From: Setoptus koraiensis
Lineage: Eukaryota; Animalia; Arthropoda
Direction of reading: 5' to 3'
DNA: 64,000 bases
Assembly: GCA_048013815.1 (NCBI GenBank)
Contig: CM106586.1
Location: forward strand, 20,832,001-20,896,000
Part shown: positions 1 to 5,383 of the stretch, one piece after another
Layout of the letters: each line of letters starts with the position of its first letter
How positions within the stretch are numbered: the stretch's first letter is position 1
Position numbers and translations under genes: made by a program
Notes under the pieces: generated by a model
Told to the model about the DNA's origin: nothing
The model's database searches: none
Seen by the model: only the letters and a program-made list of their open reading frames with translations

Positions 1-212
1 TATTTCATAAACTAACAAGCACAATTATATTTCTTGAATTACTCTTGGAATCAAACAAATAAACTCTTAATATGGATTTATTTCTTAATACATATTGCTG
101 TATGCTTAGGATAATTTTGCTCTTGACTAAATTGATATAGTTTTACGAATTCTGACGTGGCCCCATAACTAAAATAATAATATAATTTTTTCTTATAATC
201 ATATGTTTGAAC

Positions 213-2449
213 TCAAAGCTTTGTCTGACGAGGATAATACTCTTCAAGGATGCCAGGTGGTATACGACGCAACATATCTTTAGGAAACATACGTAACAAC
301 TTCCAGGCAATATTTAAAGAATCGAATACTGTCCGGTTCTCATGCATGTCCTGAGCTAGAAAACCTCTTTCAAATTTATCTAGAAACTCTAAGTAAAGCA
401 AGTCATCTGATGTTAGTGCCTCTTCACCGGCAACTTTCTTCATTGGAGCAACATCCTGGGTGGCAGTTGCGTAGCAGGCGTACATCTGATTGGACACATC
501 TGAGTGGTCTTTTCTTGTCATGCCAGGTCCAATAGCGGACTTCATGAGACGACTAAGTGAAGGTAAAACATTGATAGGTGGATAGATCTTACGACCATGT
601 AAATTACGATCAATATAGATCTGACCTTCAGTAATGAACCCTGTAGTGTCGGGAATGGGATGAGTAATGTCATCATTGGGCATAGTTAATATAGGAATTT
701 GTGTAATCGATCCTGTCCTTCCTTCTACACGGCCAGCTCTTTCATAAATTGTTGCTAAATCACTGTACATGTAGGGTGGATAACCACGACGTCCTGGAAC
801 CTCTTCGCGCGCTGATGAAATCTCACGTAGAGCGTCACAATATGATGTCATGTCCGTCAAAATGACTAAAACATGACGGCCGCACTCGTAAGCCAAAAAT
901 TCTGCTGTTGTCAAAGCAATACGAGGTGTTATTATACGTTCAAATGTTGGATCATTCGCTAAGTTGATAAACAAGCATACGTTTTCCATTGACCCATTGG
1001 CAATAAATTCATGCCTAAAAAATCTAGCAGTCTCTGATGTAACACCGATAGCGGCAAACACTATGGCAAAGTTACTCTCAGGCTTGTCACCTCCCGATGT
1101 TTCAGTTTCAGAACCGGGAGCTTTCACAAGACCAGCTTGACGACAAATTTGTGCAGCGATTTCATTGTGGGGCAGACCAGCTGCAGAAAATATGGGAATT
1201 TTCTGGCCTCTTGCAATAGAATTCATGACATCGATAGCTGAAATACCGGTTTGTATCATTTCCTGAGGATAGTTACGACTAGCAGGATTAATGGGCTCAC
1301 CATTGATATCGAGATATTTTTCTGGAGTTATTGCATCACCGCCATCAATAGGTTTACCACATCCGTTAAAGATACGTCCAAGCATGTCTTCTTCTACGGG
1401 CACCCTGAGGAGCTCGCCAGAGAATTCACACTCTGTGTTTTTGACGTCTAAGCCTGATGTTCCCTCGAAGACTTGAACGACCGCTTTGGTCCCCTTGAAT
1501 TCTAGAACTTGAGCAGTTCTGCGGCTGCCATCAGGCAGCTTAATAATAACAATTTCACCATATTGTGGAAAGCGAACCAGATCGACAACAAGTAGCGGCC
1601 CGTAAACAGATCCTATTGTTTTGTAGGTTAACCTAGGCTGAAAATCTTTGGGCGCCGACTTAGTTTCGCTGGGCTGCACTAGTGATCCTTCGCCTCGTTT
1701 AGATAAAGCCGATATTTCTGGCAATAGTTGTTGATTTACCATTTCGAGTCGATTCTCCAGTGTGTTGGACACTTTGATTTTGGAATTGATCGCGGTCAAT
1801 TCGATACCTCCACAAGATTCAGGATGGAGATAATTTTTTTCATCGATCTTAAGATTGCATGGATCGCCGGATCGTTTTCTATACGTTTCCGCACATTCTT
1901 CCATGACTGATTTGACCAAATCGGCGTCTTGTTGTCGACATCTAAGTAGTACATCTTTTTCCATAAGTCTGTAGAGCGCTTGCTCAATGAGCTGCTTGAG
2001 GAGACCCTTATACCTGTCGGTATCGCGGGTGACTTCGAGCAAACTAGATCTGGCGTCGTCGAGTAGATTTCTAATGTGTTCGCCGCGAGCTTTCAGCACC
2101 TTTAGCCTGGCCTGGTTGAGCATGTGTGAATTTTGTATTTTTCTATCCAATTCCACCTGCTTTTCCTTTTTTTCATAATATTCCATAATCTTGATGCGCT
2201 GCTCTTGCACCAGACGGCCCTTTTCGATGTTGAATTCTTCCTCGGCTTTGGCTTCTATCTCCTCGGCCTTCTCGGTGGCCTCCTGCTCGATGAAGGCCAT
2301 CATGTGATTGATCTGATATCATGGCAGATGAGACAGGTCGCTTGTTATTGTTAGAGTAATTGATAAAATAACATTGATTGGATATAGAAAAGGATGTGGT
2401 AGGTGTCATCACTTACCTGACGTTGGACGTCAGAGTCGCTCAAAGCCAT
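213..2449 (-). CDS. ATP6V1E/ATP6V1B: V-type ATPase subunit E - subunit B in-frame fusion protein (exon 1 2449-2417, intron 2416-2313, exon 2 2312-213)
   Basis: Exon 1 encodes [11 protein letters not shown] and ends CAG|gtaagt; acceptor gatatcag|ATC AAT CAC ATG gives [19 protein letters not shown] (subunit E). E runs to LLPEI (~1713). A 24-aa linker follows, then QPRLTYKT...VFEGTSG...[21 protein letters not shown]...[21 protein letters not shown] (subunit B) to the stop at 213. No stop between the two. Confidence 0.9.
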
Positions 2450-2644
2450 GGCTGTTTTTGCTTAGCTAATATTAATTAGCGTATCTACAGCAGAATTATA
2501 ACAATTTGACAATATGTTTGGTTTGTGTGAATATAAGACGATATATATGTGTATATATTTTATACGGCAATATTCTTGGGGCAATAATTATGTAAGTATA
2601 TGTATTGATGTTGTAAATATTTCTCTGTAGAGTTATAAATCGTA

Positions 2645-2928
2645 GAATGATGAAAGCTTTGCTGGCTAGTAGCGAACAAAGAGCACAAGGGGATAGAACG
2701 CTAGCGTGTGGATATCGTTCAATTGAGAACGCTATCGCACACACAAACGCACACACACACGGTCACAAGCTCGGAGGCCACAAGCGGTGACACTCGCACA
2801 GACAATCGTGCGACAGAGTACAAGTGATTGAGGGTACGCTTGTCTGTCTGTCTAGCAGGGCCACTGCACAACACAGTGTGTGTTGTCTGTGTGTCTAGAG
2901 TGTGAGTTACGCAAACACACGTACAGGG
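2645..2928. repeat. Upstream block shared with the TRIP12 5' region (copy 1)
   Basis: gaatgatgaaagcttt.ctgg..agtag.gaacaaagagc..ggggatagaa.g.tagcgtgtg...acggtcacaagct...cactcgcacagaca...tacaagtga...ggtacgcttgtctg matches 34759-35040 collinearly. Confidence 0.88.
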
Positions 2929-3576
2929 TGTCATGTTATAACCGAATTTCTGCTCAAGCACAGGTCCGATTGGCGCGCAGAAAACTCATAATGTGCAGCA
3001 CAATCTCGTCCGCCAAGCTACCCGCCCTAAACTAACATACCTCGCATATGTGCCCAAGTATTTCGGGCTCAGCGAGTCCGGCAGTTGCTGGCGGGATATG
3101 AATTGTCTCGATTGAGACACAGAGCGTCGAATGGCGAAACAAAGCTCCAATAGAAGACCGTTAAAGGCGTCGAAATGGTTCGCAAATTCAATCGAACATA
3201 CCCCTTTCACCCGCGAACGTCCCCCGCCCCACGGTACTCGCAAGCACAGTCTGAGCTCGCCTTGCTACCACCTACAGGCCAAAAAAGCATTGCACAGCCA
3301 GGCGTAAGCTATACACAATAGCCACTTGACTGGCACACCCTGTATCTCTGCACTGGGTGTAATCACACTCTTGCAGTGTTCTCGAACACAATCCGCGAGA
3401 GGCACTGGCTGCGCCTTCATGCACAATCGAGTGCAAAAAGTGTCTCGGTGAATTCTGCCCAGTTCCTGCCGATAGCGGCCTATAGCACGAATAAACGGTA
3501 GCCAATTAAGTGATGCACATATATATATTATCCGATCTAACTCTTGCCTATTGTATGACAGCGGTAAAACACTCTT

Positions 3577-5383
3577 TTATTCTGTTTTCTTTTTATTATT
3601 CTTATCGGATGACGCTTGCGCCTTCTTAGCCTTTTTGTTTCTGGCTTCACGCACGTCACTCTCATTGGGAACACAATGCAAATGTTCGGGATCAACACGT
3701 TGATGTTCGGCGCAGTGAACTAGTTGCGGTTTGTCATTTACACACATGATAATATCCTGACGATTTAGATAATATCTAGGGAAAGGCCAATAGGTGTTAC
3801 CTTGATCATCGACTGGGCAGGTGAAATGTGCTAATGCATCGCTTTTGCAACCCAAAATTTCGGCCCACTGACAACTCTTTGTTCTGTCGTCGTAAATTTG
3901 ACCTTCAACAGTGCACCTCCTGACTTCGGGCACACCAGCCTTGCATTCATAGTAGTCTATCGAACAGCTTGGCTGTCCTTGCACCGGAAATAGTCCGTAC
4001 TGCCAGCGACAACCAGGGCTCGATACGGGATTTGGTATTGTCTTATCTCCACAGGTTGTGTTCCAACGGTGTACACAATTATCTACTACTGTGTCCTTCG
4101 TTCCGTATAGCAAGCCATTTGGACACTGTTGCTCAGTGGCGTGACCATTATTACAAACATAATATTTATCACAAGCTGTGGGGTGCTCTACAGTGGTCGT
4201 GCCAGTTGGAGGACAAGGACCGTTCTTAGCGGCTGGTCTCCTCATTATGGCGGGATTTGGCTTGTTTTGAGAAGACTCTGATGGTTTCTGCTCACTTGTA
4301 AATGTTGTCTGATCACTTGTGATCGATTGCGGTGGCCTAGATGATGGTCTCTTATTCGTACTCTGTTGCTGTGACGGTTGTTGAAATTCCTCTGAGAATG
4401 CCCCACCACCGCCAGGTTCATTTGGGCTTACAGGTTTTCTACCGTTGCTGTTCTTATTAGACGGGCTTGGCTGGTAACCATAATCTTGCTTAGCTAGGTC
4501 ACCATTTTGATTGTCAATCAGCTCTTCATCTGATATGGCCGGTGGGGCTAGAGTTGATGTAGAAGATGATAAGGCAGCAACGAGATCAAAAATACTTGTC
4601 ACAGGTTGGGCGCTACCCGAATCGCCATCATTATTTTGTCTTACGGCAGGCATACCAAACTGGTTCTCACTAATGATTGGCCTCGAAGTTTGAGCTCGAC
4701 GCGAATCTATACCAATCTGAAGTTTTACTGGCGCTGGTCTTGATTGGGAGTTACGTTTCGGAGTGGGACTATCCTCAGATTGATTTTGATTGTTGTCTAA
4801 AGCGGCATCTTGTTCATTTGGCAGCTGCAAGCGAGTCGGTTGAGCCTCTGAAGCTACCGGAAACGAATCTAGTCTATCTATGGAATCATGATTTCCATCA
4901 GATTGACTTGCCGACCATTTTTGTTTAGACGGACCGTCAGAAACGAATAGAGATGCTGCCGGCTCAATCGACTCCTCAATTGTCTCTTCCTTGACTATCT
5001 TCCATCCGTTTTGCGAGTTATGATCCGCAACTGATGATTCTGGTTTTAAATTTACACTTGAACCCGCTTTGTTAATGGCTTCTAATGGAGAATGAGCTAC
5101 ATTTGTTTCAGCCTTGCTATCGTGTGCGGTAGCATATGGTGCTTGTTGATTTCCGATATCAGGATTTACCAATATTCTTATGCGGCCTTGAGATCGTTTT
5201 TTCATGCAAAACATTGAAGACGAAAAACGTTTAGAGAATGATTGTCAATCGATGCTGTAACAGGTTGTTACAACATGTTTGAAAGCTGTAAACAAACTCA
5301 CCTTGTTCTAAACTGTCCGCTGCATCATAGGCCCTTACTGCCAATGATGCAATTAATAGAAGAATTATCGATAAATCTTGCAT
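3577..5383 (-). CDS. Secreted chitin-binding protein with three peritrophin-A (CBM14) domains, obstructor/CPAP3-like, with long low-complexity N-terminal region (exon 1 5383-5302, intron 5301-5187, exon 2 5186-3577)
   Basis: Exon 1 MQDLSIILLLIASLAVRAYDAADSLEQ is a signal-peptide-like sequence with donor G|gtgagt; in-frame acceptor ctcaag|GC. Three Cys-patterned domains at the C-terminus (CDKYYVCNNG..CPNGLLY; CSIDYYECKAG..C; CVNDKPQLVHC). Confidence 0.85.

What the first reader, a model, noticed from the sequence alone, without database searches (positions are those of the whole stretch)
213..2449. Natural in-frame fusion of V-ATPase subunit E to subunit B
Seen: one reading frame encodes a nearly complete subunit E, a 24-aa Met-free linker ([24 protein letters not shown]), then a complete but visibly divergent subunit B. 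E's usual C-terminal tail is replaced, and B has no ATG of its own at the junction. Known: eukaryotic E and B are separate genes, both are present in three copies per V1, and the E C-terminal head docks on the N-terminal crown of B in V-ATPase structures. Inference: the fusion geometry (E C-terminus to B N-terminus) and 1:1 stoichiometry are structurally compatible, so this could be a functional covalently tethered stator-B subunit or a chimeric paralog.
Basis: partly seen in the sequence, partly recalled or inferred. Interest (0 to 1): 0.9.

Follow-up and report, generated by a model that had tools for sequence, protein, structure and literature searches.

The report
Mite V-ATPase E–B fusion gene
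In gall and rust mites (Eriophyoidea), two normally separate parts of the cell's proton pump, stator subunit E and head subunit B, are made as one conserved, expressed 80-kDa protein.

Summary
On the minus strand, a two-exon gene (CDS 2449-2417 and 2312-213, with a 104-nt intron) encodes 710 aa. It consists of V-ATPase subunit E (aa 1-214), a 21-aa linker, and subunit B from its conserved QPRL start (aa 236-710).

It is not an assembly or annotation artefact:
- A spliced, mRNA-derived contig covers the whole ORF with no other joint.
- Twenty-three full-length orthologues (83-98% identity) come from independent assemblies. They include Fragariocoptes setiger (Phytoptidae) and Aceria tosichella (Eriophyidae), so the fusion probably predates crown Eriophyoidea.
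- Selection is strongly purifying in all three parts (omega about 0.02-0.03), and linker length is held at 17-21 aa.
- No stand-alone eriophyoid E or B appeared in the protein searches. A whole-genome search was not possible.

Among 1.84 billion representative proteins, only this cluster matches full length. I also found an unrelated, uncultured bacterial family with the same E-to-B architecture and a similar linker.

Most likely the protein serves as both E and B, with each peripheral stalk tied covalently to its own B.

One feature is unexplained: B, but not E, changed sharply on the eriophyoid stem and has stayed nearly fixed since.

I found no report of the fusion in the literature searched; public records call it "subunit B".

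The parts
2450..2570 (-). 5' UTR (part of exon 1)
   Evidence: The mRNA-derived contig of run X3 reaches 2570. The ATG is at 2449-2447.
2417..2449 (-). CDS exon 1: 11 codons, [11 protein letters not shown] (N-terminus of subunit E)
   Evidence: Sequence read; joined CDS translated. It matches the N-terminus of all full-length orthologues and of stand-alone E.
2313..2416 (-). Intron 1 (104 nt, GT..AG, phase 0), at the ancestral first-intron position of the E gene
   Evidence: Skipped by the RNA-derived contig. The Dinothrombium stand-alone E gene has an intron after the same codon 11. The close relative L001 has a 100-nt intron at the same place. Fragariocoptes and the eriophyid-like orthologues lack it.
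1704..2312 (-). Subunit E body (aa 12-214): long N-terminal helix plus C-terminal alpha/beta head, ending at ...LLPEISAL
   Evidence: Pfam PF01991, 2.7e-65. phmmer to human E1 chain 6wlz_J: query 1-198 against chain 15-212, 9e-63. AF2 secondary structure: H2-91, H95-113, then a strand/helix domain. Alignment A2.
1641..1703 (-). 21-aa linker [21 protein letters not shown] (aa 215-235), replacing E's 11-aa tail and B's ~26-aa N-terminal extension
   Evidence: Translation and alignment to stand-alone E and B. Length is 17-21 aa in all 24 orthologues; the first half is conserved and the second half variable. AF2 pLDDT is below 50 across ORF residues 195-219. dN/dS is 0.03-0.04 in close pairs.
216..1640 (-). 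Subunit B (aa 236-710): N-terminal beta-barrel, nucleotide-binding domain, C-terminal helical domain
   Evidence: Pfam PF02874, PF00006 and PF22919. phmmer to human B2 6wlz_D: 221-694 against 41-508, 1.7e-238. Foldseek TM (target) 0.93-0.94, rmsd 2.2-2.7 A to human, rat and bovine B chains. Start translated.
213..215 (-). Stop codon
   Evidence: ORF list; CDS translation.
48..212 (-). 3' UTR, with AATAAA at 82-77 about 29 nt before the contig's end
   Evidence: The RNA-derived contig ends at 48. Minus-strand sequence read.

Best explanation
This is a real, transcribed and strongly conserved gene of eriophyoid mites. It encodes V-ATPase peripheral-stalk subunit E and head subunit B as one 710-aa (80 kDa) polypeptide.

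**Shown:**
- the architecture;
- the single spliced mRNA;
- the gene's presence in both sampled eriophyoid families;
- purifying selection on E, linker and B.

**Inferred:**
- The protein is the mites' only source of E and B.
- It enters V1 uncleaved, three copies per complex. The E head sits on the N-terminal crown of its own B, while the E N-terminal helix still pairs with G and reaches down to C, H and a.
- The roughly 20-aa flexible linker takes the place of the B N-terminal peptide through which stalks normally dock on B. A non-covalent contact has become a covalent one, with fixed 1:1 stoichiometry.
- Free V1 normally keeps its EG stalks, so the tether should not block regulation by reversible V1/Vo dissociation.

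**Origin:** the 5' end is the old E gene, because its first intron sits at the ancestral position. The B coding sequence was joined downstream, with loss of E's stop and tail and of B's start. Retroposition and rearrangement plus deletion cannot be told apart, because this lineage lost nearly all introns.
For: **Architecture.** Pfam finds E followed by the three B domains in one ORF. phmmer against PDB sequences matches human E1 and B2 chains. The AF2 model has mean pLDDT 79 and pTM 0.68, a disordered linker, and a B part with TM 0.93-0.94 to solved B chains.

**Transcript.** The 2417-nt contig of run X3 lies on 48-2312 and 2417-2570. It skips only the GT..AG intron.

**Conservation.**
- Twenty-three full-length fused orthologues are 83-98% identical. 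They include NCBI KAG9511159.1 (Fragariocoptes, Phytoptidae) and UniProt A0A6G1SLF9 (Aceria tosichella, Eriophyidae).
- Orthologous genes sit on independent contigs of 5-105 kb.
- Nei-Gojobori dN/dS for window vs L001 is 0.022 overall: E 0.048, linker 0.027, and B with 0 non-synonymous against 88 synonymous changes. For L005 vs L006 it is 0.027.
- Linker length is 17-21 aa in all orthologues.

**Phylogeny.** Fused E and fused B each form one clade inside acariform/trombidiform mites.

**No sign of separate copies.**
- No stand-alone B above 77% identity follows the fused hits.
- No stand-alone E exceeds 67% identity, and none falls in or next to the fused clade.
- The nearest unnamed E hits come from samples other than those that gave the fused genes fetched.

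**Geometry.** The EG head binds the N-terminal end of B (PMC6131620). In the related A-ATPase, stalks bind through the N-terminal ~20 residues of B (PMC3470569).

**Convergence.** Five bacterial E-B fusion proteins, 58-70% identical to the query P0259, have 16-28-aa linkers. One sits in a complete V/A-ATPase operon.

**Origin.** The Dinothrombium E gene has its first intron after the same codon 11.
Against: - No whole-genome search for stand-alone E or B could be run. The protein searches list only the best 120 hits, and a canonical-looking eriophyoid E or B could be hidden lower down.
- There is no protein-level evidence. Cleavage in the linker, or an internal start, would yield separate subunits.
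- The transcript evidence is one assembled contig, not individual long reads, so a minor B-only transcript cannot be excluded.
- AF2 returned no inter-domain error map or coordinates, so cis docking of the E head on its own B was not tested.
- The B-specific burst of change on the stem would also fit a paralogue that took on a new role.
Confidence: 0.7

Rival explanations
1. Polyprotein: the gene is translated as E-linker-B, then cut in the linker. Ordinary separate E and B subunits assemble, and the fusion only couples their expression 1:1.
For: The linker is predicted to be disordered and accessible. Its first half is conserved and carries a K-R pair in 23 of 24 sequences.
Against: Fragariocoptes has TKTGETG with no K-R. 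V1 subunits are cytosolic, away from dibasic-site convertases (general knowledge). Linker length is held at 17-21 aa, and bacterial fusions hold a similar length. That is expected of a tether, not of a cleavage site. Removing B's N-terminal docking peptide would weaken stalk binding if the chain were cut (PMC3470569, inference).
Confidence: 0.12
2. Extra chimeric paralogue: canonical E and B genes exist elsewhere in eriophyoid genomes, and the fusion has a specialised or new role.
For: The stem branch of B is very long: 1.52 substitutions per site, against about 0.2 or less for every other branch. Fifty of 366 otherwise invariant B positions are replaced. Absence of stand-alone copies was not tested genome-wide.
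Against: No eriophyoid stand-alone E or B appeared in two searches of 5.8 billion proteins, although F. setiger and A. tosichella sequences are in that database. The fusion retains the ancestral E gene's first intron position, so it is the original E locus and not a retrocopy of E. dN/dS is about 0.01 in B across the crown group. The B motifs searched for are present.
Confidence: 0.13
3. Separate products from one locus: alternative splicing, an internal promoter or internal translation initiation gives normal E and normal B.
For: An in-frame ATG|GTAAAT lies near the end of E. The contig evidence cannot exclude minor isoforms.
Against: The mRNA-derived contig shows no joint other than the 5' intron. 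The codons after ATG|GTAAAT still encode conserved E sequence ([12 protein letters not shown]). The first Met downstream of E is aa 321, which would remove most of B's N-terminal barrel. Orthologues keep the ORF continuous.
Confidence: 0.04
4. Artefact: a misassembly or merged gene model of two neighbouring genes.
For: Nothing in this gene points to it. The A. lycopersici genome paper does warn that transcript contigs often merged neighbouring genes into apparent chimeras in that compact genome. One beetle protein found here (P0334, E+A) looks like a merged gene model.
Against: A single uninterrupted ORF occurs in 24 independent sequences from NCBI, UniProt, JGI, ENA and Logan assemblies. DNA-like contigs of other runs cover the junction. 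There is no stop codon, no start codon and no intergenic DNA between E and B.
Confidence: 0.01

Closest known systems
Canonical eukaryotic V-ATPase subunits E (Vha26 / ATP6V1E / Vma4) and B (Vha55 / ATP6V1B / Vma2)
   Same: Same Pfam families and folds. E part: 60-67% identical to arthropod E. B part: 73-76% identical to metazoan B, TM 0.93-0.94 to solved B chains. The degenerate nucleotide-site motif SAAGLPHN is present, as in the stand-alone B sequences aligned.
   Different: Here they form one polypeptide from one gene. E's 11-aa C-terminal tail, B's ~26-aa N-terminal extension and B's start codon are replaced by a 17-21-aa linker. B also carries about 50 substitutions at positions invariant in 11 other metazoan B proteins.
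Bacterial V/A-type ATPase E-B fusion proteins found here (P0259, P0393-P0396; uncultured, nearest stand-alone B from Planctomycetes / Vicinamibacterales MAGs)
   Same: Same order (E then B), same junction (end of the E head to the start of the B barrel), and a similar linker length of 16-28 aa. They are encoded in a V/A-ATPase operon: d-I-K-F-[E-B]-D-A.
   Different: The event is independent. The B part is only ~50% identical to the mite's, the organisms are prokaryotic, and there is no intron. I do not know of a description of this family. It has only five divergent metagenomic members, none characterised.
Non-covalent EG-B attachment in A- and V-ATPases (Kish-Trier & Wilkens 2009, as cited in PMC6131620 and PMC3470569)
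   Same: The same two surfaces are brought together: the C-terminal globular head of the EG stalk and the N-terminal end of B.
   Different: In known enzymes the contact is non-covalent and uses the free N-terminal ~20 residues of B (shown for the A-ATPase). In the mites that peptide is replaced by a covalent link.

Membership tests
V-ATPase subunit E (Pfam PF01991) | Sequence match to the family model above the curated threshold | tested here: met
   220 bits against a cutoff of 24.2, profile positions 1-196 of 199. 9e-63 to human E1.
V-ATPase subunit E (Pfam PF01991) | Long N-terminal helix followed by a C-terminal alpha/beta globular head | tested here: met
   AF2 model: helices 2-91 and 95-113, then a strand/helix domain 117-202, with pLDDT mostly 75-87.
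V-ATPase subunit E (Pfam PF01991) | Separate ~226-aa polypeptide with its own stop codon and C-terminal tail | tested here: not met
   There is no stop. The tail FGRNPNRKFDD is replaced by the linker.
V-ATPase subunit E (Pfam PF01991) | Forms a heterodimer with subunit G and binds C, H and a-NT | not testable with these tools
   The N-terminal 90 residues are nearly invariant among orthologues, which fits a retained partner. No binding test was possible.
V-ATPase subunit B (non-catalytic A/B-family member) | N-terminal beta-barrel, nucleotide-binding domain and V/A-type C-terminal domain | tested here: met
   PF02874 (51 bits), PF00006 (252 bits) and PF22919 (100 bits). Foldseek TM (target) 0.93-0.94 to human, rat and bovine B.
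V-ATPase subunit B (non-catalytic A/B-family member) | B-type rather than A-type: no barrel-sandwich insertion (PF16886), and the motif SAAGLPHN in the nucleotide-binding domain (degenerate P-loop, by general knowledge) | tested here: met
   No PF16886 hit. SAAGLPHN is at ORF residue 373; the residues are shared with the stand-alone B proteins aligned and are near-invariant among the 24 orthologues, with one AASLPHN in Fragariocoptes. The best PDB matches are all B chains.
V-ATPase subunit B (non-catalytic A/B-family member) | Own start codon and free N-terminal extension | tested here: not met
   B begins at QPRL with no Met. The first Met is 85 residues further on.
Bacterial E-B fusion family (P0259 group) | Common descent of the fusion event | tested here: not met
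   The mite E and B parts nest inside mite E and B clades. The bacterial B part is ~50% identical, and the proteins sit in a prokaryotic operon. The resemblance is convergent.

The most novel reading that the evidence does not exclude
In all eriophyoid mites the fused protein is the only E and the only B, so every V-ATPase has its three peripheral stalks covalently welded to the A3B3 head. The tether replaced the B N-terminal docking peptide. It also set off a one-time remodelling of B (about 50 changes at positions otherwise invariant across animals) that has stayed fixed through crown eriophyoid evolution. An uncultured bacterial lineage reached the same solution independently. Stalk-to-head attachment therefore never needs to be broken during the catalytic or regulatory cycle of rotary V/A-ATPases.
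Probability: 0.5. Interest if true: 0.78.

Novelty: new variant of a known kind. Interest (0 to 1): 0.68.

Why it matters
Rotary ATPases are textbook multi-subunit machines, and eukaryotic E and B are described as separate gene products.

A natural, anciently fixed covalent link between the stator stalk and the catalytic head gives structural biologists a ready-made test. It asks whether the stalk-head joint ever has to open during rotation, assembly or reversible V1/Vo dissociation. It also shows how much slack the joint needs: about 20 residues, in mites and bacteria alike.

It is a clean animal example of a fusion between proteins that touch each other, in the lineage with the smallest known arthropod genomes (PMC7738191).

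It also matters in practice. Public records label these proteins 'subunit B' or 'subunit B, partial'. Orthology pipelines will therefore report E as missing, or B as aberrant, in eriophyoid genomes.

The B-specific burst of substitutions after the fusion could serve as a model for co-adaptation after a change in quaternary architecture.

Tried and rejected
**Misassembly or merged model: rejected.**

**Use of the ATG|GTAAAT donor to end E on another exon: rejected.** The RNA-derived contig has no such joint, and the downstream codons are conserved E sequence.

**Ancestral adjacency of E and B followed by deletion of the spacer: no support.** In Dinothrombium the two genes are on different contigs with unrelated neighbours. 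One outgroup does not settle the point.

**Dibasic cleavage site in the linker: weakened.** The K-R pair is absent in Fragariocoptes.

**Search for stand-alone E or B in this genome: not possible.**
- Only the 64-kb window is readable.
- The scan's notes mention only V-ATPase D elsewhere.
- The supplements of the A. lycopersici genome paper hold no V-ATPase terms.
- The two nearest unnamed stand-alone E proteins came from samples other than those that gave the fused genes fetched.

**Literature: nothing found.** Seven full-text searches (eriophyoid / Eriophyidae / Eriophyoidea with V-ATPase, fusion or gene fusion; fused E and B as a single polypeptide) found no description of the fusion. Term searches inside two eriophyoid genome papers also found none.

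**Structure prediction: limited.** It confirmed the folds and a disordered linker. It returns no coordinates or inter-domain error, so cis docking of the E head on B could not be judged.

**Other long B-containing proteins among the representatives:**
- P0241 is a tubulin-cofactor-D + B chimera.
- P0334 is a beetle E + A annotation.
- P0266 is a D + B protein.
None is an E-B fusion, and the first two look like merged gene models.
Full report
**What is in the sequence**

The feature lies on the minus strand. ORF 213-2303 (696 aa) carries Pfam vATP-synt_E (PF01991, residues 4-199, 220 bits). This is followed by ATP-synt_ab_N, ATP-synt_ab and ATP-synt_VA_C, the three domains of V/A-type A/B subunits. 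The A-specific insertion domain is absent.

Upstream, an ATG at 2449 opens an 11-codon exon ([11 protein letters not shown]) that ends at a GTAAGT donor. Joining 2449-2417 to 2312-213 gives a 2133-nt CDS with a single stop, encoding 710 aa of 80.0 kDa.

I aligned the protein to stand-alone mite, insect and horseshoe-crab E and to stand-alone mite and insect B.
- E is retained through '...LLPEISAL' (aa 214). Its usual 11-residue tail (FGRNPNRKFDD) is lost.
- B begins at its conserved 'QPRLTYKT' (aa 236). It lacks the ~26-residue N-terminal extension and the start Met.
- Between them lie 21 residues, [21 protein letters not shown].
- The first Met after E is aa 321, deep inside B's N-terminal barrel.

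One small correction: three of its 24 'linker' residues (SAL) still align with E.

**It is transcribed as one mRNA**

I laid the contigs of four public runs on window 1-3600. Run X3 gave one 2417-nt contig lying on 48-2312 and 2417-2570. It skips exactly 2313-2416, with CT..AC on the plus strand, which is GT..AG on the gene's strand.

A contig lacking the intron must derive from spliced RNA. It covers the 5' UTR, E, linker, B and the 3' UTR with no other joint. An AATAAA at 82-77 lies about 29 nt before the contig's end.

Other runs gave contigs that run unbroken across the junction (1-2305 in X2, 1-2229 in X5). X2 also holds contigs that cover the intron, as DNA would.

The limit of this evidence is that it rests on an assembled contig, not on single long reads. 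A minor B-only transcript cannot be excluded.

**It is conserved across eriophyoid mites**

A search of 5.8 billion proteins returned 23 full-length proteins with the same four Pfam domains, 100% coverage and 83-98% identity. Two carry names.
- KAG9511159.1, 'V-type proton ATPase subunit B, partial', is from Fragariocoptes setiger (family Phytoptidae).
- UniProt A0A6G1SLF9, 'V-type proton ATPase subunit B', is from Aceria tosichella (family Eriophyidae).

The rest come from independent Logan, JGI, ENA and MGnify assemblies, on contigs of 2.7-35 kb. The window's organism is therefore an eriophyoid mite.

In the trees, the window plus its 98%-identical relative (P0001), Fragariocoptes, and a 21-member clade containing Aceria form three basal lineages. 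The fusion thus probably predates the crown group sampled.

The alignment has a mean column identity of 90%. Against the 22 more distant orthologues, the window's parts compare as follows.

| Part | Median identity |
|---|---|
| B | 91% |
| E | 74% |
| Linker | 49% |

The linker's length is held at 17-21 residues. Its first half (S/T-K-R/T-G-E-x-x-L-V) is conserved, and its second half is free to vary.

**Selection**

Nei-Gojobori estimates on codon alignments are below.

| Pair | dS | dN | omega, whole gene | omega, E | omega, linker | omega, B |
|---|---|---|---|---|---|---|
| Window vs L001 | 0.41 | 0.009 | 0.022 | 0.048 | 0.027 | 0 (0 non-synonymous, 88 synonymous changes) |
| L005 vs L006 | 0.80 | 0.021 | 0.027 | 0.043 | 0.041 | 0.012 |

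More distant pairs are saturated at synonymous sites. Both halves and the linker are under strong purifying selection. This is not a decaying chimera.

**Is it the only E and B?**

This could be tested only partly.
- In the first search, no stand-alone B more than 77% identical followed the fused hits.
- A search with the E part alone returned 2217 proteins. The best were 60-67% identical, and none was named as eriophyoid.
- In a tree of those 120 best stand-alone E proteins plus the 24 fused E parts, the fused sequences form one clade (support 100). Its sister group is other acariform mites, and nothing stand-alone falls inside or beside the clade.
- The two nearest unnamed E proteins come from samples other than those that gave the fused genes fetched.
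- The fused gene keeps an intron after codon 11. That is the position of the first intron of the stand-alone Dinothrombium E gene. The fused gene is therefore the original E locus, not a retrocopy of E.

These results make a second E or B unlikely, but they do not exclude one. The tools cannot search the rest of this genome, and each protein search lists only 120 hits.

**How it most likely works**

Published work places the C-terminal globular head of the EG stalk on the N-terminal end of B (review PMC6131620, citing NMR work). In the related A-ATPase, the stalks bind the catalytic head through the N-terminal ~20 residues of B (PMC3470569). The fusion joins exactly these two ends and removes exactly that N-terminal segment of B.

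The AlphaFold2 model was built from 59 aligned sequences and has mean pLDDT 79 and pTM 0.68.
- It predicts the long E helix and the E head.
- It predicts a low-confidence stretch (pLDDT below 50) across ORF residues 195-219, which covers the end of E and most of the linker.
- It predicts a normal B. The B part superposes on human, rat, bovine and yeast B chains with target TM 0.90-0.94.

I infer that the linker is a flexible tether. It lets each E head sit on its own B crown and turns a non-covalent docking into a covalent one, with built-in 1:1 stoichiometry. E and B are both present three times per V1.

By general knowledge of V-ATPase regulation, free V1 retains its EG stalks. The tether should therefore not interfere with reversible V1/Vo dissociation.

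Docking in cis, absence of cleavage and assembly with G are inferences. None was tested.

**An independent precedent**

An exhaustive phmmer scan of 1.84 billion representative proteins found only one cluster matching the query end to end, the mite cluster.

Checking the longer B-containing hits by Pfam turned up P0259 (680 aa), with a weak E match ahead of B. Its sequence has the typical end of a prokaryotic E followed by a B start. A search with P0259 found four more full-length relatives, 58-70% identical to it. All carry PF01991 plus the B domains.

Two members lie in V/A-ATPase operons.
- L010 has the order d(AC39)-I-K-F-[E-B]-D-A.
- L009 has the same order, but its contig ends just after D.

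Their linkers are 16-28 residues. The nearest stand-alone B proteins are from Planctomycetes and Vicinamibacterales MAGs.

This is a convergent fusion of the same two ends with a similar tether length. It supports the view that the arrangement is mechanically acceptable.

**Origin**

In Dinothrombium, E and B lie on different contigs with unrelated neighbours. Nothing there suggests the fusion arose from old neighbours by loss of a spacer.

The Dinothrombium E gene has four introns and the B gene three. The fused gene has only the first E intron in the window's lineage and in L001. It has none in Fragariocoptes or the eriophyid-like clade.

Eriophyoids lost most introns (PMC7738191). The intronless B half therefore cannot distinguish retroposition of a B cDNA into the end of E from rearrangement plus deletion.

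**An unexplained feature**

In the B tree, the fused clade sits on a stem of 1.52 substitutions per site. Every other branch is about 0.2 or less, and crown branches are short. In the E tree, the stem is an ordinary 0.27.

| Subunit | Positions invariant in stand-alone proteins | Replaced in all 24 fused proteins |
|---|---|---|
| B (11 stand-alone metazoan B) | 366 | 50 (14%), 46 of them by one fixed residue |
| E (16 stand-alone arthropod E) | 71 | 3 (4%) |

The B replacements are spread over all domains, at 11-18% per domain. B, one of the most conserved animal proteins, was thus remodelled once on the eriophyoid stem and has stayed nearly fixed since, while E was not. Possible causes are co-adaptation to the tether, change in subunit A, or loss of other partners. 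I could not test them.

**Novelty**

The sequences are public but labelled 'subunit B'. Seven full-text searches and term searches in two eriophyoid genome papers found no description of the fusion.

I rate it a new variant of a known kind. It is a standard V-ATPase with a changed subunit architecture, fixed across an old and species-rich mite lineage.

**Verdict**

| Claim | Confidence |
|---|---|
| Real, expressed, selected fusion gene | about 0.95 |
| Full mechanism (sole source, uncleaved cis tether) | about 0.7 |

Interest: 0.68.

Noticed in passing
L009:5487-7529 (P0259); L010:9001-11052 (P0395); also P0393, P0394, P0396: A small family of uncultured-bacterial V/A-ATPase proteins (678-689 aa) fuses subunit E to subunit B through a 16-28-aa linker. 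In L010 the operon order is d(AC39)-I-K-F-[E-B]-D-A. This is convergent with the mite fusion, and I do not know of a description of it.
   Followed up: partly
P0423, P0425, P0427; P0266: Prokaryotic proteins of ~950-1050 aa carry the A-specific PF16886 domain plus A/B domains and match B over about two thirds of the query. They may be A-B fusions. P0266 (669 aa) is ATP-synt_D followed by B. Their reality was not checked.
   Followed up: no
window 216-1640 (B part) versus 1704-2312 (E part): There was a B-specific burst of substitution on the eriophyoid stem: branch 1.52 against 0.27 for E, and 50 of 366 otherwise invariant B positions replaced against 3 of 71 in E. Near-stasis followed. The cause is unknown.
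   Followed up: partly
window 2313-2416; L001:993-1092; L003 (Dinothrombium E gene): The only intron of the fused gene sits after codon 11, exactly where the first intron of the stand-alone Dinothrombium E gene lies. The window's lineage and its 98% relative keep it. Fragariocoptes and the eriophyid-like clade have lost it. It is a marker for ordering intron loss within Eriophyoidea.
   Followed up: partly
window 2277-2316, run X2 (loose end at 2316): Run X2 holds a second, related copy in which an exon-1-like sequence (MALTDADVQR...) abuts exon 2 with no intron. This is probably another eriophyoid species in the same sample, or an intronless allele.
   Followed up: no
window 3577-5214 (minus) and L002:17979-19698: The next ORF upstream (545 aa) ends in a Cys-rich region that looks like a chitin-binding domain. 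That reading is by eye only; no Pfam search was run on it. In Fragariocoptes a CBM_14 gene also lies near the fused gene, though in a different orientation. This may be remnant microsynteny.
   Followed up: no
P0334 (Holotrichia oblita KAI4453197.1) and P0241: Annotated eukaryotic proteins combine E with a partial A subunit (P0334), or tubulin cofactor D with B (P0241). They look like merged gene models, not real fusions.
   Followed up: no
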